Source: Mytilus californianus
Taxonomy: Eukaryota
Direction: 5' to 3'
NCBI RefSeq assembly: GCF_021869535.1
Contig: NW_026262667.1
Coordinates: forward strand, 1,612,001-1,676,000
DNA length: 64,000 bases
Positions 1,332 to 52,441 of this stretch are shown in pieces. The position numbers and the translations under genes were made by a program. Under the pieces are notes generated by a model that was given only the letters and a program-made list of their open reading frames with translations, searched no databases and was not told the origin of the DNA. Each line of letters opens with the position of its first letter. Position 1 is the stretch's first letter.

Positions 1332-1416
1332 GTGTGAACACAGGTAAAAAGTGATTAGCGATCTTTTATTTCTGGAAAAGCATTGCAAACAAAAACTAGT
1401 GAAAAATGGCAATTTA

Positions 1417-2455: not shown

Positions 2456-3465
2456 CTTGATCTCAATGAAATGACAGAAATCATTTCTTTATAATAGTTT
2501 TTTCATGACCTAAATCCAAGATATTATTTGAGTCATTAGCCTTTCGGATTAGGCCCTGACTGGCAAATATGACCATTTCCTGATCCTTTACTGAAAATCA
2601 AAATCACAATTTTAATTAATTTATACCAGAAAGTTTGAGCACTTATCTTTAATGTTTATTAACATTGTTTCAATCTTAATCCTGTGTTGTATAAGCAAAG
2701 TTTCACAATTTTTTTCTTTTCTTTTAAATTTTGGTTCATTTGTATGTTTTGGAGTTTAGTGTGGAGTTCATTTCGCTGAACTAACATACAGTATTGATAA
2801 GGGGTCAGCTGAAACCCACGTCTGGATGCGGGATTTTCTGGCTGCGTTGAAGACCCATTGTTGGCCTTGGGCATTCCATTCTCTATTCTAATTAAAATTT
2901 TAAATTCAAAATCCCCATAAATTGTACCCCTCTGGTATATGTAAAAACATTTTGCCAAAATGTAAAGGTCTGTGAGAGGAATTAGGCAAACAAACTCATG
3001 TGCTGAACATGTAAAATGTTTTTAAAAAAAATCACTAAAATTCAACAACCTGTAATTATGTGAAAAATATATAAGAAAATAAAAAACTGTTAATATATAT
3101 TTCTACAAGTATTTTGCAAAAAAAGAGGGTTCCAGTTTAAAAACTGTAAGAAGAGTTCAACTTGAAAAACCAGGCACCATATATGCAGACGAAGGGATGG
3201 ACAAAGGTTTAACAATATCCTCCCCCCCCCCCCGCACTTGCTGTTATACACTCATGAAAATACAATCCCTTTTATCAGCAACACTTATTTTTTCACATCT
3301 ATTTAAGAGAATGAAACAGACAGTTTCTAAATATACTTTGCATATGAATTCAACAACTAAAAATATATTATCTAACACACATCTGTAAAATGAAAATGCA
3401 GAAAGGGAATTGTATAGAATATACCATGATGTCACTCATAATTCTAAATTCTGAAAAATACATAC

Positions 3466-3740
3466 GACAAGCCTTGACACATATACGCTCCATAGAAGAA
3501 TATCTTGCTGAATGTCTGGTAACACTATAATCTCCCAATGTTGTCTTTGAGTAACTCCCACCATAGGCAAACAGGAAATAAGGACAATACGTGTCGTTGA
3601 ACATAACATCAAACGTGCTATCACCAGTGTTCCTCTTTCTTGTAAAACTGATGGTGGCCATACCATTTGTGTATCTACCCTGTACATCTTTGACATTTTG
3701 GGTTGAATCTACTGTAGGAGTAAACCTTACTGTGGCCCAT
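3466..3740 (-). CDS. Exon 11: remainder of DOMON-2 (WATVRFTPTVD…ISFTRKRNTGD…FLFAYGG…TRHSARY…CVKAC)
   Basis: ORF track 3368-3748; gaacag acceptor, C|gtatgt donor (phase 1, so the gene continues); His at 3514-3512. Confidence 0.9.
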
Positions 3741-6700
3741 CTGTTCATAAAAATACATTATTATACATGTCTGCTTACAGAATTTTTAGAGACATACATG
3801 CATAACTAAATTAATGCAACAACTCTAAGTACAATTAGGTCAATTAAATACCAATGAAAAAATTGTAGATCTCAATTTGCTTGTTTATTACTTTTTTACT
3901 TTATGGTTTTCCTCATTCCATTATTGCTTTTCAAGAAGCTATCCAAAAATGCAAAAATTAGTTTAAAGTCATCATTTAATAAGGACAATAACTCCAGTAA
4001 GACAATTTTGGTGTATATACTGCAGATCTTGACTTTTCAAGCATTTTTACCCCTTTAAGATTTACCATATCTACTGCACTTTTCAAGATGTTCGATAACT
4101 ATGTGCATTAGACTATGTTCTATATTAAACAGACTGGAATATAATTCACAAAATTAAATCAAAACACAATGAGGATCTTTTGTGTCAAGTTTGGTTTAAA
4201 TCTGGTCAGTAAATTCAGAGGTAAATATCTATGATACTTAGTTTTGGTCATTTGACTTATTTGTATATAGTGCATTGATGATAATGTTTGTTGTCTATAG
4301 TTTCTGTCGATCTATAACAGTTTTCAACTTACTGGCAAGGTACTATAAATTGGTCAAATACTAGGATTGATATTAAGGGACAATGATTTTAACAAGAAGT
4401 CAATTGATGGTTTCAGTCATAATTTACTTTTTTTGTAGATCTTGAATTGTAGATGATTTTGATTGTTTACAGTTTGAGTCTATAAATATATTACAGTTTT
4501 CAAAATTATAGGCAAAATCACTAAAATTTTGAAAATTCTTCAATCATGGGAAATAACCTCTACAAAAATTTAATTGTTGATTTCAGAAGTATTGTCATTT
4601 TGCACATCTTGTATATTGCAGTATATAGTTTCTATCTATCTATTATAATTTTCAAAATGATCATTAAAAACACTGATATTGTCCAAAAATCCTCATCAAA
4701 GGTCAATATCTCTTATAAAAGGTTCCAGACATATTGCCATTTTTGTACATCTTGTATTACTGTTCAATGTTGCTGTTTAAAGCGTCTGTGTATATATATT
4801 GTATTTCTCAAGGTATAAAACAACATCTATTTATAATAATTTAATTCATGAAACTAATCTGAAAACTAAAGAATAAATAGATCATTGATTTGAGTTCAAA
4901 AGGGATTACAGAACATGTTCATACCGGTCAGATACCACTGCTTGTCCATTGTCAATCCATCCCATATAAACATCAGTTGCAGGCTGAAAGAAATGGAAAC
5001 AAAATATGTTAAATACCAACTGAATTGTTCTTTTAAAGAGAAATAATCCGTGTCTACTGAAATATGTAAATATTATACTAAACCATACATTCAAAAATAG
5101 AAATTTCATTATTAGACTCTGGACAATTTAAAGTTGACGTATTGTATAGACACCTGTCTATTGTTGAAGCCTATATAATGACCTATAGATACCTGTTTTT
5201 TTGTGTGTCATTGGGTTGCTGTCTCAGTGACATATTCCTCATATCTTTTTTATTTGTAGATACTTCTTCATGTTCTTGATCTACCGTGCGTCCCACAATC
5301 TTTGAAAAGTGTTTTTTTCTATAAAAATACTGTCTGTCTTAAATAATGAATTCGAAATTAATTTTTTTGAATGACAAATTTTACAACAACAAAAACCCAC
5401 AAAAAATACCAACTAAATGCTCATGTCTTACCATAGTCTTGTCATCAGAGAATCCAATGGCCAGCCACTGTGATTCTGTAACCATAGCAGACAATGTAAA
5501 TTTGATTTCATCTTGAGAAGCATCATATTCCCACCGAGCATGGTAGTTACATTGATCACTGTTACAGTTCTTCCATCTCCCACCACAAGTCGGTTCAGGT
5601 TCAGGTTCTTGTGATGGCTCAGGTTCAGGTTCTCGTGATGGCTCAGGTTCAGGCCCAGGCCCAGCTGTTGGCCTTGGTTCCACTCCAGGAATATGTGGAA
5701 AATATTGACATCCAGATCTAAAACCTAAAATAGAAAAAGAACCAGACAAGGTTATTTTGACAGCTAATCTGTACTGAGTATTCTATACATGCTGTGTTTA
5801 CTTTATACATTGTTATAGAGTCCAGGGCTGCTTTCACAAAAAAATCTTACGCTAGTAAAATGTATTTAAAGTTTTGAAGACTATTCAACAAATTTAGTGT
5901 ACTTATAATCATTATTAGTCCTAAGATTGTTTTGAAAGGCAGGCTTGATCTCCAGATCACAATATTGGAAAATCAATTAATACAGATTTAAGATGTCCAT
6001 GCTACATTGATATGTATCATTTATATCAACTTCAACTTAATATATCAAATCTTAGGTTGGAGGATTAAAACTTATACAGTTCCTTAACAACAACTAGTTA
6101 CTGAGTTACACAAAAAATTGTGCTTTTAATGATTATATAATAAAATTATTGATCTGAATGGTAAAGCAAATTTTCTTTTTGTAATGGAAGCTCCATAAAG
6201 GGAGTAAAACTGGGTCTCTACCAAGGCTTCCAAAACGGTCATATATGCCGGACATTTGTATAATGTCCGGTAAAAGTCCGCCTGGGCAAAGCATGAAACG
6301 GTAATCTACTTTTTAGTTTTCAAGGCTTTAAGAGACGGTCATTTTAACATAATTCGCGATCTTTTTGACCGAACGTTTTGCCTTTAACAGCCACATATTT
6401 CCGGTCATCAAAGTGACATGTTCATTAAGTACTATCAAAACAACCCCTACTTTAATACCTTCTCATTTTAATCAAGGCTAATTAGTTGTCGAACAGCCGA
6501 AATTTACCTGTTCAGGTGACAGGTAAACTATTTTGAACCGGACATTGATCGGTCTATTCAAAGTTATTTTCTTACATTTCAGAGTTTTGCATCTAATTAA
6601 TTTAGTCAAAAAGATTTAAATTATCAGAAATACGTTTACAAATATGATTTGATGAAAAATTAAAAAGGTGAAAATGAAACATCGTCATAAACACGTTGTT

Positions 6701-12700: not shown

Positions 12701-15700
12701 TCCTCTGTAATTTAGGAAGCATACCCCATAACTTATATGACTTGCAAGTTTAAATTCAGAATATGACATGAAATTAGCACAAAGTCGTGATATATCATGT
12801 GTGTCCTTTAACAAATGAATACATGTCTCTGTTTTGTTGAACCTACATCAACAAATAAATTTTGGTAAAAGTCCAGGATTATGTAATTCAGGTTCTGGTG
12901 CACTCAAATTATCCAAAAATAATTACTGACTAACTAATATCTCATAATATGAAAAATCATACTGAATAAAAACTCTAGTATTAGCTTGAACTATTATACT
13001 AACTGTTAGTATAATAGTCCCAGGTATTAACAACAAATAAATAAATGGATGAATTTCAGGTTTTGTTCTCTCACATTTTAACAGGTTGGGGAAGATCCTC
13101 ATAAATGGGTATTATACCCCAAAATAGGTATCATTTCAGTGACAAAAAATATAAACTTTGGATTTCAAGATATTTGTTGTCATGGCACAAACATTCAGAT
13201 AAATGACAACATTTTGCTCAAAGACACCATGACTCAATTATCATATTTCTTTAAAAAGTTGGTTTTTTTTTAATCCATTGTCTTTGTAATTGAACTATGG
13301 TTTTAAGTGGGAAAATGTTACCATCTATATGATTTTTTGCCCCATAACAGCCATTATGTGGTAACACAAAATTCATTATTTAACACTGTAAATTTATACC
13401 CTATTTGGGCTATAATACCCATAAATGGGGATAGTACCTATTTATGAGGATCTTCCCCAACCTATTTAAACCTGTACAGATACTGTCAAATATTTTTTCA
13501 TGGTGATCGATTCACTTGCCAAAAATCAGAAAAATAAAACAGGATGTGCACAATAGATATCAAATATTGTATGAAAGTTTATTTCAAGTGAGTGATATAG
13601 GTGAAGATATGGCAAATTCCATGCTGCAATGGAAAACTGTAAGAACCATATAGACTAAAACAAAATATAATAGGTGCACTATACCATTAGGTACTTTAGA
13701 TTGTCTTCCAATCCAGGCAGTGATTAAATAGGAACTGAGAGAACACAAGATGTTGACTTTTTTTTGTAGATATGATAAGTGCATGTGTTCCTTTGTGTTA
13801 CCCAAAAAAATAATCTGATAAAACAGGTAGAGAGAACCTCTTAAGAGCAGGAATTTTCTCCCATGGAAAAAAATATGCACTTTTATATTTTAATCAAAAT
13901 TTGTCCACAAAAAAAAATGCCACTTTTCATATGCACTTAGTGAAATGAAGACTTAATTTCTATTTCTTCAGTACCAGGATCACATTATCAATTCATATGA
14001 AATTATGGATAAAAAAATTATTTACAAAATGCTTAAAGACAAACTCATTTTGAAATCAAACTATTAAACTGACATGTAAGCAATAGTTCCACATTATTGT
14101 GTGAGGCATAGAAAATAATTCAAGTTGTGTTCTCAATAAATATAAAGTTTTGTAAAAACATGACCAATAATTTTGGACACTTTGATTCAATTCAGAAAAT
14201 TATACCTACATATCAATTTACTAATGAAATCCTAGCTAAATTTTAAACATATTAAAGCTTCATTTTCAGTAACTTTTTACCAGAATTTTGAAATCTGTTA
14301 ATATCAATTTGAGAATGTAAATTTTACTTATGAATAAATGTATATCAATTCTTTGAAATCCTAATGCAAAAAGATCTTTCTCAAAATTAGTGATATTTTA
14401 ATAAAAGAATAGAAAAACACTAGGAATCATTTTTGGACACCTGGAATCAATTTGGAATAGCTTATTTCAAAGCAATTTTGACTGAAATCCTAGGACAGAA
14501 AGATATCTAAATGCAAATTTGTGAATTTTTAACAAAAAATAAGTTATGCAAATTTCCCCCCAGGGCCCTAATTATGACTTTGACAATTCAAGTGTTACCC
14601 ATAAATCTGAAGATCTGTATGTAATCTACATGTATATGCTAAATATATTTTTCTTCCATAAGATTACACATTAGTCATACCATGCATGAATATCTGAAGC
14701 AATTTATCATTTCATGCATTGGCAATTTCCACTTATGACACAAGAATATAAAATAACCTTAAATTACAACCTGTGAAAACAAAACTTACATCTCATTTTT
14801 TTCTGTTTTTGGTACTCCCAAATGAACTATTGGGTATTTTTCAAACTGGTGAAAAAGAAAAGATATTAAAGGTGTTCTTATGGACACTTTCTTTTATTTT
14901 ACTACTCTGAGTGAATTCTTGATTTATTCAAACTATCTTAATGTGAAATCAAATGTCTGAACAAAGATATACAGAGGGTAAAATTTGGAGATGATTAAAC
15001 TTGATGTCTCCCAACATCCTTCATGTTTGAACTGGGAAATTCTACATTAACACTTTGAACTAAAATAAAACTGCATGAGACATTTGAATGATTCAACTGC
15101 ATGTTTAATATAAATAATATACTTACTACTGGGTCTCCATCCAATTCCAATCCATGTTGTAGATTTCACTCTCATAACCATTTCTATTTCATCATTCTAA
15201 AACAAAGCAATAGTCAGCTAAAAGGGATTTTAAAATTATTTGGAGCTGATTTAAACTCTTAAGTGACCACTTGGTTTTTTACGTTTTTTTTTTAATCAAT
15301 GAGGTTTGCTTGAACATTCTGAATTCTTCATTTGTCCAAATTCAATAATGACATTAGATTTCATTGCTGTCCTTATTTTAGCTATCCTGACATCAAGAAA
15401 AAAAAGTAATCATGCTTGAGATCACCCCACAGAAAGAACAAAATATTTTTTTGAAAAAGAAAGTAAAAGTGGCTTACATATAATCTAAAATAACAAGAGA
15501 AACAGATTCCATTATTGCATCTCTAAGGATGCAATATTTCTCCACTCTCAAAACAGTTAAAAGAAAAGATATGATTTGGGATAAATTTGTCCTAAAATCA
15601 AAAATGTTTAAAGCTTTCTGGGAATTTAAGAATTGAATATTGAATGTATGTACTGTAATAGAACACAACTGCCACACAAAAAGGTATTTAAACAGCAACA

Positions 15701-27700: not shown

Positions 27701-30700
27701 ACCGCCTATTTGGTACATTTGCTGAAATAAATCATTGCAGTTATTTAACATGTACCAAAATGACTTATGTAGACATATTTGTTCTAAACTTTTCCACAAA
27801 TAAAATTTATAATCACAATGTAAATATACTGACCATAGTTTATCTAGAATAAAACATACCTTAACAAGAATGTTTCCATAGTACACGGATGCCCCACTCG
27901 CACTATCATTTTCTATGTTCAGTGGACCGTGAAATTGGGGTCAAAACTCTAATTTGGCATTAAAATTAGAAAGATCATGTGTACTAAGTTTCAAGTTGAT
28001 TGGACTTCAACTTCATCAAAAACTACCTTGACCAAAAACTTTAAACCTGAAGCGGGACAGACGGACGAACAGATGGACGAATGAACAGACGCACAAAACG
28101 AAAAACATAATGCCCAACTACTATAGTAGGTGGAGCATAAAAACTGCTAAAGATTCCTATGAAGAAACATATATAACACACCATCAATTGGGATTCTGTG
28201 GATTCATTATCATTCGTGGAAAACTAATTTTCATCAATTTCATGGGTAAAGATAAACCATGAAATTTAGATGTTCAAAAATTGAAAGTACAAATTTTCTA
28301 TAGGCTTGTAATGCAAGCCCAGACAAAACCACGAATTCAAATATCCACGAAAATACAAATTTTCCTCAATCCATGAAAATTGGTAATCATAATAATAAAT
28401 GAATCAACAGTAGTTTGATTACCAAGCTCAACACATTGACAAAGAGAACAACACAGTCACACATTGGTAGTTGATAAAGGGAAAAGAAATGCCTCAGTCT
28501 GAGATGCAAGTCAAAGTTTACATTAGCAACTTCAACTAATCTGCTTATATATATAATGAATTTTATCCACTCTAATCTCTATTTTGGATTCTTGACTACT
28601 TTAAAGTATACTAAACAATAAAAAAACACACCAACTCCATTAATTTCTTTGGAGTGAAAATTTCTATTACATATATCTTTTTAAAAAGTGATTGAAATGA
28701 GTAAAATTTTGAAAAAATAATTCTGTCAAAATGAGGATTTTTATAAAATTTCTTTGACTTTTCAAAATCTCTGTTATCACAGAGATATGCGAGATATGTC
28801 TCTCCGTTTTGTTATTTTGATAGTAAAATGCAAATGTTGAAACTAAAATGGCAATACTTTAACTTGTAAGTTATGCAAAATATTCAAAGTCAAGGCACCA
28901 TTGACTGAAGGTACAGTGCCAAACAATCTACATGGAAATGACATGTGCCAATGCTAATACATATGCATACCAAATATCATTGACCTACCACTAGTAGTTC
29001 CCATAAACTGACCTAATCACAAACTAATACATGTAAACTAAGTAAAATTTTCAAAATCAATAGACCATGACTGAGGGGTGGGGCCAAACAATCTCCATTA
29101 AAATGAGATGTGCCAATGCAAATACAACTGCATACCAAATATCATTGACCTACGACTAGTGGTTCCTCATAAACTGACCTAATCACAAACTAACGCAGGT
29201 AAAGTAAGCAAAAGTTCAAAGTCAATAGACCATGACTGAGGGGTAAGGACTAAATATTATCCATGGAAATGAGATGTGCTAATGCTTATACAACTACATA
29301 CCATTCCCCTATAAACCAACCTAATCCCAAACTAATACATGTAAACCAAGCAAAAGTTTCAAAATCAATTAGACCATAACTGAGAGGGCATGGCCAAACA
29401 ATTTTTTAAAATTTTTAAGGGTTATATTCCTAAAAAAAACACTGATAGCTACATGACTGAATGTGGAAGCTACTTTTAAGTTCCAATTGCACAAAAAAAT
29501 CAGCCTTTGGTAGCATTTAATACTATATTCCAGTGCTGATTGAAGACTTTGTATATATCTTTTTCTTGTGACTTGTTTTTAGAACAATGCAGTGCCACTT
29601 AAACATTGGCTTATACGTGTATTCATATATTTCATTCTTACAATATTCATGTTAAGAGCAATTCAGAGCATAAAAATAAATGACTTTCAAATAAAATAGT
29701 TTGAGGATTTTGTGCTGTTGACAGATGCAACTTTCTCTATTGAAATTATTTACAGCTTGTCTAGAAACCTGGGGCTTTATGGAGCTAATACCATACTCCT
29801 GTGTCCATTTCTGAAGGCTAATTTCTGGTGACCTCTCAATGTCGTTATAACAATAGGTTGCTCATTGATGTATACCAAATATCTCATGTCAATCATAAGT
29901 TCTTTTTTAGGACAACCGTGAATCAGTATAAAGAAGTTGATCCATTTAAAAAAGGCACGGTACAATAATTATCTGGGAATAAAGGTATATATTTTTACTT
30001 AAATGAAAGGATTTTTTTTAAAGTATTGTTAGTAGCTGTCACGATTTGGGGCCATTTATACAGTACAGAAAAAATTGTGATTCAAATTTAAAAAACCCAG
30101 ATGATACAGAAAAATTTCACTAATATATCATACAAAGTCGTGTCATTTTATAGAACATGGATGAGTGGCAAAGAAAAATTCTAATAATTAGTAAAAAAAA
30201 TAAGAAGGTGTGGTTTTATTGCCAATGAGGCAACTCTCGAAAAGGCCAACAAATACTTTTCATTAATCTTTTTTCCATGTAAATAAACAGTACATTTGAA
30301 CTTAAATTAATAATGTTCTGATGTTCCTTGACAGTTTTCAGGATGAGAAAGCCAAAAAAGATAATTGTTGTCCATTTATTAACATTGACATTGACTTTGA
30401 ATTTAGCATTTCTCATAATATATTAATGAAAAAATGGAAGACTTTTCTTCCTATAGTAAATCGCAACCAAGTATAAGAACTATCCATCAAATCATTCCTT
30501 TAAAATAAAAAGACTTTAACAATCAAAGTAAAAATTATTCAGTAAAACATTATGTGTCTTAAACATTTTGAAATAGACATTAATTAACTAGTTTAAAACC
30601 GTATTTAAAATATTATTTCACTATTTCTTAATGTAAATTATGTACAGATTTTCTTGTACATTTACAAGAACACAAATAATCTTTTATATTCTAGATTTGG

Positions 30701-33700
30701 AGATGATAATAGATTATTACAAAACAATTGATTGTGCATCCAAAATCTTGGAATTGATTTTTTTTTTCCTGAAGTTATTGATATAAATAATCAAAGATTA
30801 AAACCGGGGATATGACTTATTCATAGACAATTATGTCATTCACTACATATATGGAACTATCTTGAATAATTGTCAAACTGTTATGTCAGACTGCAGTTTA
30901 AATAAAATGTAACCCCAATACCATCCAAAACATATGTGAATCTTGTTTCCTTTAAAATAGAAAAAAAAGAAATAAAAGCAAATACTGATTATTTTTTGTA
31001 TCATACAGGGACAGCCATTTATGAGTGTACAACTGATGGTATAACAAAAGAAAGGGCTGTATCGTAAGACATTTTGTTTATATTCAATAAATAGTTGCAA
31101 TGTGTAATTTGGTTTTTAATGTACTCCAAATATTTAGCTATTATACGTAAACATAAGTTCATCTCAAATTCACTTAAGCAGGTGATCCTTGCTTTATTTT
31201 CTTGTGCACTTTGGGATTTTGTATCATGAATTGATAAACCAGATTCTCTTGTTTCCATTTATGGATCTTTTCAGAGTTTTTTTCTGTTTTCCTCATACCT
31301 GTAGTATGGAGAAATTTTTTTTTCATTTGTATATAAGTTGCACATCAAGTTTGCATTTATTTTAAGATCTCCTTTTCAGAGAATTACAGTCTTATACTAG
31401 GCAGTGACATTAGTACCTCCAAATGTATATAGTTAGTTACTAAGTATTGTTAGTCAAGTAAAGAGGAAGACATGATTTACTAAAGGGTTCACAGTGAATC
31501 TATGTAACCAGGTTCAATATGAATCTAATGGTTCAATGTGAATCCATTGTTTGCCATTTCATCAGTACAAATCTAATCAGTAAAGAAAAGACAAAGGGAT
31601 GAGCAATAGCATTGCTTTTACAGAACTTCAACCATCTGACAGTTAGTTTTGTGCATTTACCAATTTTAACAAAAAGAACTTGACCATGTTGACAGAGACA
31701 ACTTACATGGTAGTATATTGACGTCTGCACAGGAATAGAAGATATAATCTCCACAGTTCCCTGTTGTCCATTCTCCAGCCTGTCTTATCAGCTGAATGGA
31801 ACAGTTGCGACATTCTGTATTCGGTAAAGTTATTTGATGACTTAAAATTCTGCAAACAAAAAGAAGAAAATTGTCTTAAACAAACCACACATTAAATACG
31901 GAGGTAAAAGGTTCCCATGACTTTATTTAATTTGGATGTTTAACTATTAAATATTTTTACTCTTTAGCATACAAATAGTTTGGTAAGTAAAAAACCATTG
32001 CACATAATGTCATGTATTATTAGATAACTGTCGTATAAGGTCCAAAACCACATATGGTTTGTTATTCATTGCTTTTAAAATTCTTCTGTGATGAGATACT
32101 GTTGAAATAATAAGTCAATATATCATTACAATGTATTGGTGCTTCCCTTCACTTGATCCTAAATTCCTAGATTTATAATTGCAAATTCTTAGCTACGTTC
32201 TTGGGGAACTTTGTAAGTTCCATTGTCAGAGGAATAGCTTAATGGGCATAGGGTTCTGGTTTGATGATGCAGTGGTAATGGAAGGAAAATTATGCTCCAC
32301 AGTTACATACAAAATTTCTAGTTGGTTTATTTACAAGCATGGAAAATTAATGTTTAGTATAATTTTCAGCCAAAATGTTTAAACATGCAAGGGGGAAACA
32401 ATGAAATGCTATATATTTAATAACAGTACAATGTATTATAATATATACTTTATAAAAAAAAAATACTTAACATTTTCAAATAGTCTTCAACCTTAAAAAC
32501 ATTTATTTACTTACGTTGGATCATTTGCACCAGTATAACGGCCATTTTGTGTTGATGTAAACACCTGGACCTCTTGTTCATTATGATCTAATAACGCTAT
32601 TCTGTAACCTCCCTATAAAGGAAAAAATACAGATATCTTTTATTAATAAATTAACCTACAATGATAACTATGGTATCATTATGAGTGAGAATTTGATATC
32701 ACTTGATATCAACTTGAGTTATTTAATTTCAATATAATAATAAATGAGCCTTTGGCTTTTTTAAGTTGTTAAACTTTTTTCTCCCATGGTAAAAGAGACT
32801 TCGGATTTCGCAAATGTCGCTTCAAATATAAGTCTGCCAAAGGAATTGAGAAAATTGTGTCAGGAACTAAGACTACTATTCAATGAGATATTTTCAAGCT
32901 TTTAATATGCTTCCTTATGCAATCAAATTTGACATAAAGATTATTTCCAGGTGAGCATGTGAGTGTATTGAAAATCACAAATCTCTGATACCAAGGGTCC
33001 ATTGTGACCTTTGAGTCCTCATACACCTAACGAATAGCCATTGGAAATGTTGCATTAACACATTTTTCTAATCATTTATTCACATCACCATACATTGTGA
33101 TACAAAAATATCACTTCATGCAGGAAAAAGATAACAGTCCACAACCAATATAAGAAAATGAGGGGTATATACTGAAGGTATCAATAAGTAGTAAGGAGAG
33201 TTCTTTTGATCATATTTGCTGAAACTATGATTCAAGAAGCCAAGCAAAACTAGCTTTTCCACATTGTACTTATTACTTCTAGAAATTGTCATACTGATGA
33301 CTGTAAAGATGTATGTAATCATTTAGTACGATAATCATATCATATATCAAAAATTTTCAGTAGATACAGTGTGACAACATACTCTCTAAAAATTCATATA
33401 TAGGAACAAAAGCTGTGTTAAGGGTTTTGTTTGAACTAAAAACTTAATCGCTACAAAATCATTTATATTTTACATTAAAATCTGTAAGTTCTTTTTAAAT
33501 ATTAAGAATATGAACATGATGAAGATGTCAAGGTAGAAAAATGGGATACTTAAATATTTATTCTAAAATAACGCCATGTAAATATTTATAAGAGAGGAGC
33601 TGTTCATATAGACATACATGACTGAATTAAGTTATTTAGTTGGTTCATGCTCTTAAATATTTTGTGAGAAAGTGAACCATGATTTGAAGATCAACCAAAA

Positions 33701-36700: not shown

Positions 36701-39700
36701 ATGTTCAATCAAAATATACGAAGAAAACATTTCTTCGTATGGTAAAGTTCAATATGATAATGATATTTTAGTGGCCCACAAAATGTCTATACTATATGAT
36801 CCTATATTCCAAGCTCTAAATCACCCTGAAACCTAAAGAGTTGTGAATAAAGAGCCATAGAGCCAACTTTCTTTGCTTTCTTTTACATTATTTCACACTC
36901 TGACCAATTGATTCATACTATCTGCATGGTAAATTATAAATGTTAATCAAAGAAGGCATAAGAAGGACAAGACATAAGAATGACATTCTTAACCTAAATC
37001 TAAACCCTGCAAGATGTTTGTCTTTCAGAAACAAATTGTTAAAATTTACAAAATAAAAATCAAATTGTCTTCAAAAGCAATGTAGAGAGCGTTTTTTTTT
37101 TTATTGATATATGTATAATTGTTGACACTCTTTCAATAAAATTGAGAATGGAAATGGGGAATGTGTCAAAGAGACAACGACCCGACCATAGAGCAGACAA
37201 CAACCGAAGGCCACCAATGGGTCTTCAATGCAGCGAGAAACTCCCGCACCCGGAGGCGTCCTTCAGCTGGCCCTTAAACAAATATGTATACTAGTTCAGT
37301 GATAATGGACGTCATACTAAACTCCAAATTATACACAGGAAACTAATATTAAAAAATGATACAAGATTAACAAAGGCCAGAGGCTCCTGACTTGGGACAG
37401 GCGCAAAAATGCGGCGGGGTTAAACATGTCAAGTATACTATTAAAGTTTTTTTATATTCATATTCCATTAGCTTTTAAAAACTTGTGTATTTTAATATTT
37501 TAATAAAAATAACTGTATCAGTATAACTTTTTGTTGGCAATTTGGTTTTTTTGCAATACCAAAATGGTTACTCGGCTTATTGACATATAAGTCTGTTGAA
37601 ATTTTGAATTTGTTTACAAAAAGGAAATTGGTCCTTTAACCGGGAATTATCTACGTTGTAACCACATTCTCCTCGTGTGAACAACGGACTCGTGCCCGAT
37701 TAACGGATAAACCAAATGGACGTGATATAGCTTTGCTTAGAGGTTTGGTTTATTCCCTCTCCTGATAATCTATGTATACCTTGGAACTAGGCAGAGTTTA
37801 TCCTGAAACATTTGCAAGGCGTTTTAACTTTGTGTATACTGAGCAATATGTATCCCATAAAGTTCAATGGTAAGTTCTGTGACATTGTTGTCCTGTATGC
37901 AGCCGGATTAGTGTTTACAGTTTCTCCTGGTCGCCATTCGTTTGAAGTTTCAATAAATTTGACACTGACCAATGAGTATTAGAACTCAAAAATCGTCGTT
38001 TTGGGGTTGTTTTTTTTTTCTCGTCGGATCAGAATATGCCATTTTTAGGGACCAACCATCCACTATTAAACATTTTTTACATAGATTTAATGGGCTCCAT
38101 GTTGTCATGTTTTTCATTTAACCGAAACAAAATGAAGAATCTTTGTTAAAGATCTTCCATTCATTGTTTTGCAAAAGTATGAATTAGTTTGGCTTAACGA
38201 CTCCAGACACAGAGATGACGTCGGAAACTTGACTGTTTCATGCAGATATGAAAATGTGTACACACGACGGAACTTACTCATGTCGTTAGATTTCTCGTTT
38301 TAATTGTTTTACATTTTTCATTTCGGGGCCTTTTGTAGCTTACTATGCGATATGAGTTTTGTTCATTGTTGAAGGCCGACCTATAGTTGTTAACTTCTAT
38401 GTGATTTGGTCTGTGGTGGAATGTTGTCTCATTGGCAATCATACCACATCTTCTCATTTTTAAATTTACCCCAGCAGATGAAGAAACAAACTTCTTCTAT
38501 AGCCATTTGAGACCGCATGGAATAAACAAAAAAAAAATGATTGCTGAGTCGTTGAAACAATTCCGAGAAGAACATTTATGAGACCAGACTAAAATGACAA
38601 ATACTGAACAAACCTTATGTGGATAAGCTGTATGCCACTGGACATTTATCGTTTCTTCAGTTAATAGATCGGTTACGGGTCCAAGGCCTGTTGATTGTAA
38701 AGCATAACGCATATATATATAATGCAAACAGTTACAAAATAAACAAATTGAAAATAAAAAAGATATAAACAATAATAGCAAATATTCTGCATATGCTGGC
38801 TTTAAGCCACATTCGTAGCCTTATCAATGGAAATAATTGTATTGCTGAATTTCACTAAATGGACATTTGCACATGAATTTGGACCCTTTCATTGTTAATC
38901 TAGATAAAGAACAGCACAAAGAGCGTTTTTCAATTTATAATATATATTCACATACCAGGGGTGGGGTGATCTCCAACTACCCTGTATGGTACACATACAT
39001 ACCTGATTGTATTCCCCATGAAAAATCAGTTAAAGCTCAAGATTCTATATATATAATGGCCTTTCAAGTCTTCCCAGAGGCCAGAGATTCACAGGATTTG
39101 GATTTGACTTTTGTTAAGAAATTAAAAAAAAAACAAAAAAAACTTTGTTTTATTAGTTTTTTTTATGACTGTAGGCAATCTACTAGTAATTAAAATTTTG
39201 ATCTATCGTCATATAAGTAAAACGAAATCAGAGATCTATATTTTATTTAGATTGATCTGTATACGTATGACACGTTTTACTATTAGATATATTCAAACTT
39301 TTTAATTTCATTTATATATACAGTTTAATTGAAGCCTTAGACTTCATATCATATAAAAATTAAAATGATGAAAAAATATGGATTAAAAGCTTATCATAAT
39401 AACTTGTTCGACAAGTCATTCATTGTCAGACAAAATGTTTTTGTTTTGAATACAACGGTTTAAATATAGAATTTAAATACCCGTTTTATACATTACAGGG
39501 AGTTGGCATTATTTTCTATTGTATAATATAGTTACAAGCGGCAATATATTATTTACCTTTTGGAATTCCACATGGTGCAATAGTCCTGATATTATCCATG
39601 AAATCAAAAGCATATTTCCGTGCTGGTGGAAATTTCAAAGCAATGTGTCCGGCAACACCCGAAAATGTACATAGGGTGAAAACAATCAATGAAGTAATTC

Positions 39701-39710
39701 CAGTTACCAT
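3466..39710 (-). CDS. Spliced gene (11 exons in window, 3' end beyond window): secreted LPMO-like (His-brace) / 2xEGF / DOMON protein
   Basis: Exons 39710-39557, 38687-38614, 32612-32515, 31849-31707, 27721-27626, 25829-25707, 21123-21032, 15196-15127, 5724-5432, 4983-4925 and 3740-3466 total 1477 nt (492 codons + 1 nt). All junctions are GT-AG, phases match at all 10 introns, and the joined frame has no stop. Confidence 0.9.
4925..4983 (-). CDS. Exon 10: PATDVYMGWIDNGQAVVSD (DOMON-2)
   Basis: tctttcag acceptor, CG|gtatga donor, phase 0 to 2; M-P-x-T-D-V-x-x-G-W and D-R DOMON motifs. Confidence 0.9.
5432..5724 (-). CDS. Exon 9: FRSGCQYFP + Pro/Glu linker + start of DOMON-2 (…WLAIGFSDDKTM)
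   Basis: ORF track 5381-5749; attttag acceptor, ATG|gtaaga donor, phase 1 to 0; linker built of short GAACCT/GAGCCA repeats. Confidence 0.9.
6222..7282 (+). mobile_element. hAT-type MITE (1061 bp)
   Basis: 14-bp TIR CAAGGCTTCCAAAA / TTTTGGAAGCCCTG (1 mismatch); perfect 8-bp TSD GTCTCTAC at 6214-6221 and 7283-7290; no coding capacity. Confidence 0.9.
7940..8230 (+). mobile_element. Penelope-like reverse transcriptase fragment (degenerate)
   Basis: ORF 7950-8171 contains YRDDGFMVF…FF…AN…LKFTYE, typical of the PLE RT C-terminal region (pattern recall). Confidence 0.6.
8540..10310 (+). mobile_element. Pearl/HINE-like element, family B
   Basis: Starts CAAGAGTGCACACGCTGAAATGTCTCGCC; tandem cores AACCATGAAAATGAGGTCAAGGTCA; ends (GCC)n + hairpin + GCTCGACAAAAA; inverted copy at 62880-63947. 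Confidence 0.75.
13083..13463. mobile_element. MITE with ~24-bp terminal inverted repeats
   Basis: AGGTTGGGGAAGATCCTCATAAAT / ATTTATGAGGATCTTCCCCAACCT are exact reverse complements; TSD not clear. Confidence 0.75.
15127..15196 (-). CDS. Exon 8: NDEIEMVMRVKSTTWIGIGWRPS (DOMON-1 N-terminal strands)
   Basis: gttttag acceptor, A|gtaagt donor, phase 0 to 1; DOMON-type E-I-E...W-x-G-x-G-W motif. Confidence 0.87.
16897..18044 (+). mobile_element. Family A element (nested), with ~500-bp internal tandem duplication
   Basis: ACAAGAGGCTCTCAAGAGCC … CCGGTGAGCTAAAAA; the block starting near 16935 is repeated near 17435. Confidence 0.8.
18230..19802 (+). mobile_element. Family A-related element (nested)
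   Basis: ACTAGAGGCTC…GTCGCTCA … (GACG)n … GGCCAGGTGAGCTAAAAA. Confidence 0.75.
21032..21123 (-). CDS. Exon 7: SAVAEKITDFSSYKKTELSPEFNLFHKILP (start of DOMON-1)
   Basis: ctttttcag acceptor, CCA|gtaagt donor, phase 1 to 0. Confidence 0.82.
21574..21650. repeat. 23-bp minisatellite, ~3 copies
   Basis: CATAGATACCAGTAACATACAAA repeated in tandem. Confidence 0.9.
21858..24564. repeat. 68-bp satellite array, ~40 monomers, inside intron 6 of the minus-strand gene
   Basis: Monomer ATTGAGTAGATACTGAGTAAACATCCAATAAAGTTAACGAGTTATCATGAGATGTACCTGGAAATATC; period measured from GAGTAAACAT at 22081, 22149 and 22217. Confidence 0.97.
25707..25829 (-). CDS. Exon 6: EGF-like module 2 (DCLTNEDCHNHGVCTQLDTTFYPRQQCFCDRGWHGRHCQH)
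   Basis: Six Cys in EGF spacing with CxCxxGWxGxxC; ttatag acceptor and A|gtaagt donor, phase 1 to 1. Confidence 0.9.
27626..27721 (-). CDS. Exon 5: EGF-like module 1 (4 Cys; NVPNRRCGSHTDMGSMCMCNRTYSGKQCTFK)
   Basis: tttcag acceptor, G|gtcagt donor, phase 1 to 1; C-x-C-x5-G-x2-C signature. Confidence 0.85.
27863..28143 (+). mobile_element. Short pearl/HINE-like element, family D
   Basis: AACAAGAATG…GATGCCCC start, (GACG/GACA)n tract, 3' hairpin ATAATGCCC…GGAGCATAAAAA; related cores at ~25850-26930. Confidence 0.6.
28194..28412. mobile_element. Degenerate MITE with TIRs
   Basis: CTGTGGATTCATT…AATTTTCAT / CCATGAAAATT…AATGAATCAACAGTA imperfect inverted ends. Confidence 0.55.
28885..29400. repeat. 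~160-bp tandem core repeats (about 3 copies) of a non-autonomous element
   Basis: Recurrent CCATGACTGAGGGG…GAGATGTGCCAATGC…AAACTGACCTAATCACAAACTAA units. Confidence 0.65.
31707..31849 (-). CDS. Exon 4: ILSHQITLPNTECRNCSIQLIRQAGEWTTGNCGDYIFYSCADVNILP (end of LPMO-like domain)
   Basis: ttgcag acceptor, T|gtaagt donor, phase 2 to 1; CxxC and F-Y-S-C-A-D-V motifs. Confidence 0.9.
32515..32612 (-). CDS. Exon 3: GGYRIALLDHNEQEVQVFTSTQNGRYTGANDP
   Basis: Pyrimidine tract + tag acceptor, AC|gtaagt donor, phase 0 to 2. Confidence 0.87.
34478..34645. mobile_element. Interspersed repeat family E (SINE-like), partial copy
   Basis: ATTGAGAATGGAAATGGGGAATGTGTCAAAGAGACAAC… near-identical to 37140-37428; inverted partial copy at ~2770-2890. 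Confidence 0.7.
35240..35375. mobile_element. Small GC-rich MITE
   Basis: CAGAGGTGGATTTAG / CTGGATCCACACCTG imperfect TIRs. Confidence 0.55.
35655..35712. other. CAGAGACATATA mini-palindrome (58 bp) with 7-bp TSD CTATTGC
   Basis: TSD at 35648-35654 and 35713-35719; internal duplicated filler; right arm lacks 2 bp. Confidence 0.8.
36490..36692. repeat. 24-bp minisatellite, ~8 copies
   Basis: TTAATGCTTCAAGGTCGTTAATTC units; explains the LILNASRS ORF. Confidence 0.92.
37140..37428. mobile_element. Interspersed repeat family E (SINE-like), longer copy
   Basis: Shared with 34478. Ends …CCTGACTTGGGACAGGCGC…GCGGGGTTAAACATG, resembling a conserved mollusc SINE central domain in reverse (recall); no tRNA head seen. 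Confidence 0.65.
38290..38460 (+). mobile_element. SINE-like 3' fragment
   Basis: …GTTGTCTCATTGGCAATCATACCACATCTT; related tails at ~55380-55420 (+), ~30200-30240 (-) and ~5160-5250. Confidence 0.6.
38614..38687 (-). CDS. Exon 2: GLGPVTDLLTEETINVQWHTAYPHK (second brace His)
   Basis: caacag acceptor, AAG|gtttgt donor, phase 1 to 0; His of PHK at 38619-38617. Confidence 0.88.
39557..39710 (-). CDS. Exon 1: signal peptide + mature N-terminal His (MVTGITSLIVFTLCTFSGVAG|HIALKFPPARKYAFDFMDNIRTIAPCGIPK)
   Basis: aaaATGG start; hydrophobic 21-aa leader ending V-A-G; His codon at 39647-39645; donor G|gtaaat, phase 1. Confidence 0.88.
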
Positions 39711-52315: not shown

Positions 52316-52441
52316 TCTCTTATTCTCTTGTTTGTAATTGATGTGCCCTTATGGGGCCTTTAAAAAGGAAGGAACTGATTTGATTTGATATAGATATTCA
52401 ATGTTATGCCTAATTACATTCTCCATTTCTTTGTTATATAG

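What the first reader, a model, noticed from the sequence alone, without database searches (positions are those of the whole stretch)
3466..39710. LPMO-like domain fused to a heme-type DOMON: a possible self-contained monooxygenase plus cytochrome electron donor
Seen: the same reading frame continues through two EGF modules and a Pro/Glu linker into a complete DOMON. That domain keeps Met in GFSDDKTM-P (5434-5432) and His in TRHSARY (3514-3512). Established: Met/His are the heme b ligands of cytochrome-type DOMON domains (Iyer et al. 2007). In fungi the DOMON-fold cytochrome of cellobiose dehydrogenase delivers electrons to LPMO copper in trans. Inference: this protein may carry reductant relay and copper catalyst in cis. 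It could act in chitin or extracellular matrix remodelling (shell, periostracum, byssus, gut lining) or as a copper/redox signalling module.
Basis: partly seen in the sequence, partly recalled or inferred. Interest (0 to 1): 0.85.

Follow-up and report, generated by a model that had tools for sequence, protein, structure and literature searches.

The report
LPMO-like copper domain fused to DOMONs
This is the front half of a mollusc gene of the barely studied 'nahoda' family, whose cell-surface protein joins a domain related to copper-dependent polysaccharide-cutting LPMO enzymes to DOMON domains that keep the residues needed to hold heme; the combination is conserved across invertebrates, but its chemistry has never been tested.

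Summary
Eleven minus-strand exons (39710-3466) splice GT-AG in one frame into 492 codons: signal peptide, a His-brace domain, two EGF modules, the first strands of a DOMON, a Pro/Glu linker and a complete DOMON. That DOMON has Met at 5434-5432 and His at 3514-3512.

An RNA contig joins exons 9-11 exactly as predicted. It runs 964 nt further 5' (exons 1-8 total 850 nt) and 3131 nt further 3', so the gene leaves the window.

The N-domain belongs to the LPMO superfamily:
- a profile hits the AA15 structure 5MSZ at 1e-6;
- all 22 family members hit the bacterial SCE4755 LPMO-like model;
- the best fold match is AA15.
It passes no family's curated cut-off.

In the DOMONs the Met and His are at least 90% conserved, and the Met aligns with the heme Met of cellobiose dehydrogenase.

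The same architecture occurs in limpets, abalone, horseshoe crab and insects, where it is named nahoda, and ends in SEA domains and a membrane anchor.

The fusion is therefore real and ancient. It is not self-contained: no module loads electrons, and this DOMON sits inside a loop of another DOMON. Copper binding, heme binding and catalysis remain untested. A 2019 paper noted such sequences in passing.

The parts
39557..39710 (-). Exon 1. It holds the start codon, a 21-residue signal peptide (ends ..SGVAG), and then His22, which is mature His1 of the histidine brace (HIALKFPPARKY.. DFMDN .. PCG).
   Evidence: tblastn to 5 orthologs gives E 1e-9 to 6e-13. His follows the signal peptide in 25 of 27 family members. 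H1 is invariant in alignment A1.
38614..38687 (-). Exon 2. It ends in ..WHTAYPHK. His75 (mature His54) is the second His of the brace.
   Evidence: H54 is invariant in A1. It aligns with His91 of TdAA15A in the profile-to-PDB alignment.
32515..32612 (-). Exon 3 (GGYRIALLD...), the middle beta strands of the LPMO-like domain.
   Evidence: G56/G57 are invariant or nearly invariant.
31707..31849 (-). Exon 4. It encodes C-x-x-C, RQAGEW and YIFYSCADV. Phe146 sits at the axial position and the C-A-D motif is shared with AA15. This is the end of the LPMO-like domain.
   Evidence: C98, C101, E111, W112, S124, C125, A126 and D127 are invariant. F122 aligns with the axial Tyr of 5MSZ.
27626..27721 (-). 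Exon 5, the first and shorter EGF-like module (4 Cys).
   Evidence: Weak tblastn to the EGF-1 region of Haliotis, Tachypleus and other homologs, E 0.04-1.3. Splice sites and frame fit. Homologs carry Pfam EGF_TEN across both modules.
25707..25829 (-). Exon 6, the second EGF module.
   Evidence: Pfam EGF_2 4.2e-6, EGF_Teneurin 4e-5. tblastn 4e-10.
21032..21123 (-). Exon 7, the start of DOMON-1 (first strand region).
   Evidence: tblastn to Lottia residues 224-255, E 6e-5. Aligned in A3.
15127..15196 (-). Exon 8, DOMON-1 strands ending in WIGIGWRP.
   Evidence: tblastn 1e-5 to 1e-4 to four orthologs. G42, W43 and P45 are invariant in A3.
5432..5724 (-). Exon 9. It begins with FRSGC, the Cys at the base of the DOMON-1 loop. 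A Pro/Glu linker follows, built partly from a 24-nt tandem repeat at 5595-5653. The exon then gives the first half of the inserted cytochrome-type DOMON, ending GFSDDKTM. Met381 is encoded at 5434-5432.
   Evidence: Pfam DOMON 1.2e-9. TRF. RNA contig piece 5432-5724 and joint 4983/5432. Met is conserved in at least 90% of copies. It aligns with the heme Met of 4QI3 and 6JT6.
4925..4983 (-). Exon 10, a middle strand of the inserted DOMON (..TDVYMGWIDNGQAVVSDR).
   Evidence: tblastn to Lottia residues 420-438 of the C-terminal query, E 0.008. RNA joints 3742/4927 and 4983/5432 lie within 2 nt of the predicted sites, inside the stated ambiguity.
3466..3740 (-). Exon 11, the second half of the inserted DOMON. 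His477 (TRHSARY) is encoded at 3514-3512. The exon ends ..ICVKAC at a GTATGT donor in phase 1, so the coding sequence continues beyond the window.
   Evidence: Pfam DOMON 2.5e-9. 260 library proteins with E<=1e-3. His is conserved in at least 90% of copies. RNA contig piece 3466-3742 has 3131 nt more on its 3' side, none of it laid on 1-3465.

Best explanation
SHOWN. Bases 39710-3466 (minus strand) are the first 11 exons (492 codons) of an expressed mollusc gene of the protostome 'nahoda' family.

The encoded part has, in order:
- a signal peptide;
- a compact (about 135 aa) LPMO-superfamily domain with the histidine-brace residues (mature His1 and His54, axial Phe);
- two EGF modules;
- the N-terminal strands of DOMON-1;
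- a Pro/Glu linker;
- a complete DOMON that keeps the Met and His used as heme b ligands in cytochrome-type DOMONs.

By collinearity with limpet orthologs, this complete DOMON is inserted in the Met-loop of DOMON-1. The missing 3' part of the gene should then encode the rest of DOMON-1, at least one more cytochrome-type DOMON, a SEA domain, a transmembrane helix and a cytoplasmic tail.

INFERRED. The protein is a membrane-anchored extracellular redox chain. One or more b-type heme DOMONs take single electrons from an external donor, such as ascorbate or a partner like a b561/ferric-reductase-type protein. They pass the electrons through flexible linkers to the Cu(II) of the histidine-brace domain.

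The reduced copper site then does one of two things. It acts oxidatively on a cell-surface or matrix glycan (chitin is the obvious candidate in molluscs and arthropods), or it handles copper itself. The protein has no electron-loading module of its own.
For: Gene model and expression:
- GT-AG, in-frame exon chain.
- A 4722-nt RNA contig with the exact exon 9/10/11 joints. It has 964 nt 5' of exon 9, against an exon 1-8 sum of 850 nt, and 3131 nt 3' of exon 11.
- Of the 10 differences tabulated between contig and window (14 in all across the two laid pieces), 5 are synonymous and 5 are replacements.

Family and fusion:
- Single collinear HSP to Patella P0157 residues 3-525, E 2e-134.
- The same order, N-domain then EGF then DOMONs, in most cases with SEA and a hydrophobic anchor, occurs in Haliotis, Lottia and Tachypleus. 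It also occurs in two transcript-sized Logan contigs (6883 nt for 2184 aa; 5349 nt for 901 aa).
- The family extends to insects and includes a Rhodnius protein named nahoda.

LPMO nature of the N-domain:
- H1 and H54 are invariant, and the four Cys, E111-W112 and C-A-D are invariant.
- His directly follows the signal peptide.
- A profile of 22 N-domains hits TdAA15A (5MSZ) at E 1.1e-6, with His54 on His91 and Phe on the axial Tyr.
- 21 of 22 hit Pfam LPMO_10 (best 6.9e-7) and BIM1-like (best 1.2e-4).
- 22 of 22 hit NCBIfam SCE4755 LPMO-like (best 1.6e-13).
- The best structural match is 5MSZ: Z 7.8 over 124 residues, with AA16, X325, AA10, AA13, AA9 and AA11 also listed, and Foldseek rank 1.
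- Atlas neighbours are LPMO families.

Heme-type DOMON:
- Pfam DOMON passes its cut-off on the window's own exons.
- Met54 and His143 of the domain alignment are at least 90% conserved.
- The Met aligns with the Met of the G-G-P-M loop of the MtCDH cytochrome and the G-G-S-M loop of the CcPDH cytochrome. Non-heme DBH has Leu there.
- Pfam CDH-cyt hits the Haliotis ortholog at 4e-43.
- The DOMON model has pLDDT 91.6. Its Foldseek hits are DBH, then heme b domains of PDH, CDH, Nxr-C and ethylbenzene dehydrogenase.
Against: - No cofactor binding was or could be tested.
- The closest solved DOMON by sequence and fold is the non-heme DBH domain. Alignments to the CDH and PDH cytochromes are weak (E 0.03-0.15) and stop before the His.
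- The N-domain model is only moderate (pLDDT 67.5; residues 1-30 score about 50). A VIA Z of 7.8 is in the range the tool warns can be a common arrangement.
- The N-domain is about 60 residues shorter than AA15 and has 4 rather than 10 conserved Cys. The position two residues before the axial residue is Tyr, not the Glu/Gln used by many active LPMOs (the latter point is from my own knowledge). It may therefore bind copper without cleaving polysaccharide.
- No homolog carries an electron-loading domain.
- Direct linkage of exons 1-8 to exon 9 rests on contig length arithmetic and orthology, not on a read laid across the joint.
Confidence: 0.5

Rival explanations
1. Copper-handling protein rather than enzyme. 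The histidine-brace domain works like fungal Bim1/X325, binding and handing over copper at the cell surface. The heme DOMONs reduce Cu(II) (or Fe(III)) for uptake. No polysaccharide is cleaved.
For: The domain is compact, about 135 aa, the size of X325 and the SCE4755 family rather than AA15. 21 of 22 members hit BIM1-like, and LaX325 (6IBH) appears among the fold matches at Z 5.8. The protein is membrane-anchored, as Bim1 is (PMC10952591 for Bim1/X325). DOMON-containing ferric reductases are known in animals (own knowledge). Tyr replaces the usual second-sphere Glu/Gln (plus own knowledge).
Against: BIM1-like scores (15-21 bits) are below the cut-off of 27 and weaker than the LPMO_10, AA15 and SCE4755 matches. 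Whether an Asp fills the fourth copper site, as in X325, could not be checked. There is no link to copper transporters in these data.
Confidence: 0.25
2. Redox-inactive surface glycoprotein. The protein is a mucin-like, SEA-bearing adhesion or matrix receptor. Its LPMO-like and DOMON domains are only ligand-binding (chitin or sugar) scaffolds without metal cofactors.
For: Long Pro/Glu/Thr-rich linkers, SEA domains and a single-pass anchor are typical of mucin-like surface proteins. A conserved cytoplasmic motif in arthropod members suggests a receptor or trafficking role.
Against: His1, His54, the DOMON Met and the DOMON His are invariant or nearly so across phyla, in proteins otherwise 30-45% identical. 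This is hard to explain without cofactor binding. The Met sits exactly on the heme Met of the CDH and PDH cytochromes.
Confidence: 0.17
3. Gene-model artefact. Exons 1-8 (LPMO-like, EGF) and exons 9-11 (DOMON) belong to two neighbouring genes, and the fusion is a prediction error.
For: No read or contig was laid across the 9.4-kb intron between exons 8 and 9, because only 5800 bases could be laid.
Against: - Exon 9 starts in phase with exon 8 and encodes the conserved FRSGC that directly follows W-R-P in all orthologs.
- The RNA contig continues 964 nt 5' of exon 9, matching 850 nt of exons 1-8 plus a short leader. A second 208-nt contig continues 76 nt, which equals exon 8 plus 6 nt.
- Two transcript-sized contigs from other animals encode the whole fusion in one ORF.
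- The product is collinear with Patella P0157.
Confidence: 0.03

Closest known systems
nahoda family (Drosophila nahoda; 'DOMON domain-containing protein' entries such as Lottia V4BC59, Patella LOC130010296, Haliotis XP_067677862, Tachypleus LOC143240269)
   Same: Same domain order and the same conserved motifs. The product is collinear over all 492 residues with the Patella protein. The window gene is a member.
   Different: The window holds only the 5' part. As in limpets (and an ark clam model), but unlike Haliotis, horseshoe crab and insects, a complete cytochrome-type DOMON is inserted inside DOMON-1. The family has no tested function. The papers found mention nahoda only in gene lists (PMC4316639, PMC4321029, PMC10627254, 10.1101/2021.06.13.448152, PMC2099499).
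AA15 LPMOs (Thermobia domestica TdAA15A, PDB 5MSZ)
   Same: Best solved relative of the N-domain by profile (E 1.1e-6) and by fold (Z 7.8). Shared features are N-terminal His, the second His in a P-H-x-G context, an axial aromatic three residues before C-A-D, and an animal origin (PMC5823890).
   Different: About 15% identity; about 135 against about 195 residues; 4 against 10 conserved Cys; axial Phe instead of Tyr184; Ala89 equivalent shifted. Members mostly fall below the LPMO_10 gathering score. AA15 C-terminal extensions, as I recall, are chitin-binding modules, not EGF or DOMON.
SCE4755 family polysaccharide monooxygenase-like proteins (NCBIfam NF043005, bacteria)
   Same: Strongest profile match of the N-domain: 22 of 22 members, best E 1.6e-13, covering profile positions 26-145 of 146, and of similar compact size.
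   Different: Scores (for example 29.5 bits) are far below the 75-bit family cut-off. The family is bacterial and single-domain and is itself uncharacterised (model type 'hypoth_equivalog').
X325 / Bim1 LPMO-like copper proteins of fungi (Pfam PF20238, PDB 6IBH)
   Same: Histidine-brace fold, small size, cell-surface anchoring, sub-threshold profile hits in 21 of 22 members, and a fold match at Z 5.8 (PMC10952591).
   Different: Below the Pfam cut-off. The Asp that fills the fourth copper site in X325 could not be located. X325 proteins are GPI-anchored single domains without EGF or DOMON.
Cellobiose dehydrogenase / pyranose dehydrogenase cytochrome domains (CAZy AA8; PDB 4QI3, 1D7B, 6JT6), which reduce LPMOs in trans
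   Same: DOMON fold (Foldseek E 1e-5 to 1e-4). The family Met aligns with the heme Met. The functional logic is a b-heme DOMON next to an LPMO-type copper site.
   Different: 10-17% identity. Equivalence of the His is not shown. In fungi the cytochrome is fused to a flavin or PQQ dehydrogenase that loads it and meets the LPMO as a separate protein. Here the DOMONs are fused to the copper domain and no dehydrogenase is present.
DOMON of dopamine beta-hydroxylase (PDB 4ZEL)
   Same: Closest solved DOMON by sequence (E 2e-11) and by fold (E 3e-7). It is also an animal protein in which a DOMON precedes a copper monooxygenase.
   Different: DBH has Leu where this family has the conserved Met, and no heme is known there. 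Its catalytic copper domain is the unrelated PHM/DBH type.

Membership tests
nahoda-type LPMO-like/EGF/DOMON membrane proteins | Collinear order: signal peptide, His-first domain, two EGF, then DOMON-1 (W-x-G-x-G-W-R-P ... C) | tested here: met
   Single HSP to Patella P0157 residues 3-525, E 2e-134. Exon-by-exon tblastn to five orthologs.
nahoda-type LPMO-like/EGF/DOMON membrane proteins | C-terminal part: DOMON-1 C-half (MDC..YYTRDRSTPR), further DOMON, SEA, membrane anchor | not testable with these tools
   This part lies outside the window. An HMM of the C-half finds nothing in the window. The RNA contig has 3131 nt beyond exon 11.
LPMO superfamily (histidine-brace copper proteins) | Signal peptide cleavage leaves His as residue 1 | tested here: met
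   The window reads ..FSGVAG|HIAL, with small residues at -1 and -3. The same junction occurs in 25 of 27 homologs. No signal-peptide predictor was available, so the cleavage site is inferred from the pattern.
LPMO superfamily (histidine-brace copper proteins) | Second brace His and axial Phe/Tyr at the homologous positions | tested here: met
   H54 is invariant and F122 is at least 90% conserved. They align with His91 and the axial Tyr of 5MSZ.
LPMO superfamily (histidine-brace copper proteins) | Immunoglobulin-like beta-sandwich matching solved LPMOs from residue 1 | tested here: inconclusive
   The top match is 5MSZ (Z 7.8, 124 residues aligned; Foldseek rank 1, E 0.01). Seven other LPMO families are listed, most aligned from model residue 1. 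However, the model pLDDT is 67.5 and a Z under 8 is not decisive.
LPMO superfamily (histidine-brace copper proteins) | Binds one Cu and oxidises a polysaccharide with reductant and O2/H2O2 | not testable with these tools
   Needs protein chemistry.
CAZy AA15 / Pfam LPMO_10 | Score above the LPMO_10 gathering threshold; about 195-residue domain with ten conserved Cys | tested here: not met
   The Lottia domain scores 18.7 bits against a cut-off of 23. 21 of 22 members match only at E up to 1 (best 6.9e-7). The domain has 135 residues and 4 invariant Cys, against ten in AA15 (PMC5823890).
X325 / BIM1-like (PF20238) | Score above the Pfam cut-off of 27 bits | tested here: not met
   15.4 bits for Lottia and 21.1 bits for Haliotis; best E 1.2e-4.
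SCE4755 LPMO-like family (NF043005) | Score above the curated cut-off of 75 bits | tested here: not met
   29.5 bits for Lottia; best E 1.6e-13 among 22 of 22 hits. Related, but not a member.
DOMON (PF03351) | Profile match above the gathering score and the DOMON beta-sandwich fold | tested here: met
   38.9 and 37.8 bits against 32.7 on the window's own two exon ORFs. The ortholog model has pLDDT 91.6 and 10 strands. Foldseek gives DBH, PDH, CDH at 3e-7 to 1e-4.
Cytochrome-type (heme b) DOMON, AA8-like | Met ligand in the loop after the W-x-G-x-G-F-S strand | tested here: met
   Met381 is in the window. The position is at least 90% conserved. It aligns with the Met of G-G-P-M in 4QI3 and G-G-S-M in 6JT6, while DBH has Leu there.
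Cytochrome-type (heme b) DOMON, AA8-like | His ligand near the C-terminus, facing the Met across the heme pocket | tested here: inconclusive
   His477 is in the window. The column is at least 90% conserved and lies 89 residues after the Met; in CDH, from my memory, the spacing is about 98-102. No alignment to a solved cytochrome reaches this position, and the model coordinates could not be read.
Cytochrome-type (heme b) DOMON, AA8-like | Binds heme b (Soret and alpha bands, redox-active) | not testable with these tools
   Needs recombinant protein.

The most novel reading that the evidence does not exclude
The nahoda family would be a natural, animal-wide fusion of an LPMO-type copper centre with its own chain of b-heme DOMON electron carriers on the cell surface. 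It would be the first LPMO-cytochrome system in cis and the first outside fungi. It would be used either to oxidise chitin or matrix glycans at the membrane, or as a long-sought extracellular Cu(II)-handling/reducing device of invertebrate cells. In molluscs the relay would have been extended by inserting extra cytochrome DOMONs inside another DOMON.
Probability: 0.3. Interest if true: 0.85.

Novelty: new variant of a known kind. Interest (0 to 1): 0.6.

Why it matters
LPMOs need electrons. In fungi a separate enzyme, cellobiose dehydrogenase, brings them through a DOMON-fold cytochrome. Here a histidine-brace domain and DOMONs with heme-ligand residues are joined in one membrane-anchored protein. 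That protein is conserved from molluscs to insects and horseshoe crabs, with fragments in mites, crustaceans, springtails, a nematode and a sponge record.

If the cofactors are confirmed, three things would follow:
- Animals would gain a second, architecturally new class of histidine-brace protein besides AA15.
- There would be a natural model for intramolecular heme-to-copper transfer.
- The Drosophila gene nahoda, so far only a name in gene lists, would gain a concrete biochemical hypothesis. Fly genetics could then test roles in chitin or matrix remodelling, or in copper handling.

If the cofactors are absent, the strict conservation of the four ligand-like residues would itself need explaining.

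Tried and rejected
- I searched the window for the second half of DOMON-1 with tblastn and with an HMM built from 48 homolog segments. Nothing was found; the best hit was exon 11 itself at E 0.5. My first reading, 'DOMON-1 is truncated or degenerate', was then rejected. Lottia, Patella and Tegillarca carry the C-half after one or two inserted DOMONs.
- I looked for further exons in 1-3465 by tblastn and by laying RNA. None were found. The deep coverage at 1359-2900 is an interspersed repeat, not this gene.
- The Atlas search with exon 1 alone gave only unnamed clusters and was uninformative.
- No same-species full-length protein is in the fetched sets. The best is a 129-aa ORF fragment at 87% identity. 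The 3' part of this gene therefore could not be read.
- Literature searches for X325+DOMON, 'histidine brace'+DOMON, AA15+'DOMON domain', CYBDOM+LPMO and nahoda found no functional study. The only relevant text is one passage in PMC6950343. My guess that nahoda is CG12781 found no support in the library and is not used.
- Met-His and His-His distances in the models could not be measured, because no coordinates are exposed.
- The spliced window protein could not be submitted to the remote fold and search tools, which take only references. Orthologs (Lottia) were folded instead.
The window has no N runs.

Full report
OBSERVATION

The window has no N runs. On the minus strand, eleven open segments between 39710 and 3466 can be joined at canonical AG/GT sites with consistent phases. 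They give 492 codons without a stop.

The exons are 39710-39557, 38687-38614, 32612-32515, 31849-31707, 27721-27626, 25829-25707, 21123-21032, 15196-15127, 5724-5432, 4983-4925 and 3740-3466. The last exon ends in phase 1 at a GTATGT donor, so the coding sequence goes on.

ATG at 5434-5432 is the last codon of exon 9 (..GFSDDKTM, Met381). CAT at 3514-3512 is His477 in TRHSARY.

Pfam DOMON passes its curated cut-off on the two raw exon ORFs. They score 38.9 and 37.8 bits against 32.7 and cover profile positions 2-48 and 60-124. EGF_2 hits exon 6.

TRANSCRIPT EVIDENCE

I laid four runs on window 1-5800, keeping under the operators' 6000-letter limit.

A 4722-nt contig at depth 75.7 from an RNA-seq library labelled 'mollusc metagenome' lies on 3466-3742, 4927-4983 and 5432-5724. 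Its joints match my exon boundaries within the stated 1-2 nt ambiguity.

That contig has 964 nt more on the 5' side of exon 9. Exons 1-8 add up to 850 nt, which leaves about 114 nt for a leader. It has 3131 nt more on the 3' side of exon 11, and none of that lies on window 1-3465.

A 208-nt contig from the window's own organism label ends at 5724 with 76 nt unplaced. That equals exon 8 (70 nt) plus 6 nt.

Raw stranded RNA reads of that organism cover the exons thinly, on one strand only, and one read shows the 4983/5432 joint.

The contig differs from the window at 14 places across the two laid pieces (about 570 nt). Of the 10 differences tabulated, 5 are synonymous and 5 are replacements. This is mild evidence of coding constraint.

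The gene is therefore expressed, exons 9-11 are spliced as predicted, and the transcript is much longer than the part in the window. Linkage of exons 1-8 to exon 9 is strongly indicated by arithmetic and orthology, but no read was laid across that joint.

WHAT FAMILY IT IS

I ran an exhaustive HMMER search of 1.8 billion representatives with exon 11. It found 260 proteins, led by large multi-DOMON proteins.

Pfam on these shows 3-8 DOMONs and 1-7 SEA domains, with EGF_TEN near the N-terminus and CDH-cyt hits (4e-43 for the Haliotis protein). It also shows a weak BIM1-like hit at the extreme N-terminus.

tblastn of these proteins back onto the window recovers every exon in order.

The sources are Haliotis asinina, Lottia gigantea, Tachypleus tridentatus and Tegillarca granosa. 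There are also two transcript-sized Logan contigs that encode the whole fusion in one ORF: 2184 aa on 6883 nt, and 901 aa on 5349 nt.

A word-indexed search with the Lottia N-terminal 150 residues adds Patella, more horseshoe-crab paralogs and many insects (Drosophila, Anopheles, Bactrocera, Chrysodeixis, Timema). It also finds a Rhodnius protein that NCBI names 'DOMON-like domain-containing protein nahoda'.

A profile search restricted to short proteins finds fragments in Daphnia, Dendroctonus, Orchesella, Tetranychus, the nematode Plectus and a record from the sponge Geodia. UniProt labels two of them 'Chitin-binding type-4 domain-containing protein'.

The window product aligns with Patella P0157 residues 3-525 in one HSP (40.7% identity, E 2e-134). 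The window gene is thus the mollusc member of an old protostome family, and possibly a wider metazoan one.

In the papers I could search, nahoda appears only in gene lists. It is listed as a marker of accessory-gland secondary cells, as a candidate under selection in cactophilic flies, and as an abundant EST in an earthworm. No functional study was found.

THE N-TERMINAL DOMAIN

In 25 of 27 homologs a His directly follows a typical signal peptide. In the window this reads ..FSGVAG|HIAL.

I aligned 22 mature N-domains (A1). The invariant residues are H1, P7, R10, D15, F16, D18, T22, C26, G27, P29, H54, G56, P94, C98, C101, A109, E111, W112 and S-C-A-D 124-127. F122 is at least 90% conserved.

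Four independent lines place the domain in the LPMO superfamily:
- The A1 profile hits the chain of Thermobia AA15 (5MSZ) at E 1.1e-6. H54 lies on His91, and F122 on the axial aromatic three residues before the shared C-A-D. His91, Tyr184 and Ala89 of TdAA15A are as given in PMC5823890.
- 21 of 22 members hit Pfam LPMO_10 (best 6.9e-7), and 21 of 22 hit BIM1-like (best 1.2e-4).
- All 22 hit NCBIfam NF043005, the bacterial 'SCE4755 family polysaccharide monooxygenase-like protein' (best 1.6e-13).
- An AlphaFold model of the Lottia domain (pLDDT 67.5, pTM 0.66) has 5MSZ as its best match. Foldseek gives rank 1, E 0.01, probability 0.99. The Foldseek-independent aligner gives Z 7.8, 124 residues and rmsd 3.6. 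AA16, X325, several AA10, AA13, AA9, AA11 and an oomycete oxidoreductase also appear, most aligned from model residue 1.

Atlas language-model neighbours are again SCE4755, LPMO_10 and BIM1-like clusters at score 0.85, which is only a lead.

The domain passes none of the curated cut-offs: 18.7 against 23 bits, 15-21 against 27, and 29.5 against 75. It is about 60 residues shorter than AA15 and has 4 rather than 10 conserved Cys. I therefore file it as a distinct, compact branch of the LPMO superfamily, not as AA15, X325 or SCE4755.

Whether it is catalytic is open. The residue two positions before the axial Phe is a conserved Tyr. Many active LPMOs have Glu or Gln there (own knowledge, not tested).

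THE DOMONS

I aligned 20 cytochrome-like DOMON copies from the family plus the two window exon pieces (A2). The nearly invariant positions are four Cys, W22, W43, G47, S49, M54, D58, D73, P82, D85, F106, R108, G133 and H143.

The A2 profile hits the DBH DOMON best (4ZEL, 2e-11), where the Met column holds Leu. It hits the heme domains of CcPDH (6JT6, E 0.027) and MtCDH (4QI3, E 0.15) weakly. There the family Met falls on the Met of G-G-S-M and G-G-P-M, residue 74 of 4QI3 by my count, which I recall as the heme ligand.

The ortholog DOMON folds with pLDDT 91.6. Foldseek returns DBH (3e-7) and then only heme b domains: PDH, CDH, nitrite oxidoreductase subunit C and the ethylbenzene dehydrogenase gamma subunit.

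No alignment reaches the His, and I could not read coordinates. Co-location of Met and His is therefore not shown. I put heme binding at about 70%.

A STRUCTURAL SURPRISE

Exons 7-9 encode only the first strands of another DOMON (..WIGIGWRP-SS-FRSGC). Its conserved second half (H-x-M-D-C-x-D ... YYTRDRSTPR ... KYHG) is absent from the window.

In all orthologs these two halves are separated by a variable insert, about 30 aa in one transcript and 100-430 aa of Pro/Glu/Thr-rich linker in others.

In Lottia, Patella vulgata and Tegillarca, one or two complete cytochrome-type DOMONs sit inside that insert. The window protein is collinear with the Patella arrangement.

Profile-profile comparison puts the DOMON-1 Met (P-M-D-C) on the Met column of the cytochrome-type DOMONs (probability 96%, E 4e-9). 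The insertion thus sits just before the putative heme loop, and DOMON-1 may bind heme as well.

HOW IT MOST LIKELY WORKS

Shown:
- an expressed protein with a signal peptide that carries a histidine-brace-type domain followed by EGFs and DOMONs with heme-ligand residues;
- in orthologs, more such DOMONs, SEA domains, a single hydrophobic anchor and a cytoplasmic tail.

Inferred: copper on the N-domain (about 75%) and heme b on the DOMONs (about 70%) form a tethered extracellular electron path (about 45%). This ends in oxidative chemistry on a glycan such as chitin (about 35%), or in copper handling like Bim1/X325 (about 25%).

Against the word 'self-contained': no family member has a flavin, PQQ or b561 module. 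The hemes must be loaded by a soluble reductant or a partner protein.

Many arthropod members, and several unnamed contig-derived homologs, share a conserved cytoplasmic end (..FYFMPSQRKYSGEVVRVYVDYNK). This points to an intracellular partner and a receptor-like or trafficking aspect that the redox picture does not explain.

COMPARISON AND NOVELTY

The family is in the databases under uninformative names. UniProt already marks a few fragments as 'chitin-binding type-4'.

I found no paper that describes the architecture, the conserved brace and heme ligands, the nested DOMON, or any experiment.

The gene is therefore a new member of an existing but uncharacterised family. As a system, an LPMO-type copper domain with cytochrome-type DOMONs in cis on an animal cell surface is a new variant of the known LPMO/cytochrome partnership.

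My tests agree with it.

VERDICT

- Interest is 0.6.

Noticed in passing
window 21123-3466 (exons 7-11); homologs P0004, P0157, P0005: DOMON inside a DOMON. In limpets, an ark clam and this gene, one or two complete cytochrome-type DOMONs with Pro/Glu linkers are inserted between the N-half and C-half of DOMON-1. The insertion lies just before DOMON-1's conserved P-M-D-C loop and is flanked by two conserved Cys. In other phyla the same site holds only a low-complexity insert of 30-430 aa.
   Followed up: partly
homolog C-termini (P0008, P0159, P0163, P0173, P0170-P0172, P0138, P0003): Arthropod and several unnamed members end in a strongly conserved cytoplasmic motif, about FYFMPSQRKYSGEVVRVYVDYNK. 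The limpet proteins have a different tail. This suggests an intracellular binding partner.
   Followed up: no
window 46277-49689 (+), and 43253-43594 (+): Non-LTR retrotransposon upstream of the gene. An 859-aa ORF has PHD finger, AP-endonuclease and the start of the reverse transcriptase. It is followed after a stop at 48856 by a 275-aa ORF with the rest of the RT. A separate RT fragment lies at 43253-43594. The raised G+C at 46-50 kb comes from this element.
   Followed up: partly
window 21858-24558 (intron 6): A 2.7-kb satellite: 68-bp unit, about 40 copies, 90% matches, with higher-order periods of 339 and 407 bp. It explains the GC/AT skew peak at 22-24 kb.
   Followed up: partly
window 1706-2460, 16936-18046, 18597-19802, 51279-52316 (reverse): An interspersed repeat of about 750 bp with internal about 500-bp self-similarity, 71-83% alike between copies. 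It is extremely abundant in RNA-run contigs (summed depths of thousands to hundreds of thousands) and shows many internal 'joints'. It is a repeat family, not part of the gene.
   Followed up: partly
window 5595-5653 (exon 9): The Pro/Glu linker is encoded by a 24-nt tandem repeat (2.5 copies, 97% matches). This fits the very variable linker lengths among orthologs.
   Followed up: no
window 36492-36690 (intron 2): A 24-bp tandem repeat, about 8 copies, which reads as a spurious 72-aa open frame (INDLDALRI...).
   Followed up: no
Atlas cluster and P0191: Molluscs also have a cluster of about 158-aa stand-alone proteins carrying BIM1-like domains (138 members). A 159-aa N-domain-only protein is recorded for the sponge Geodia barretti. 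The histidine-brace module may also exist unfused in animals.
   Followed up: no
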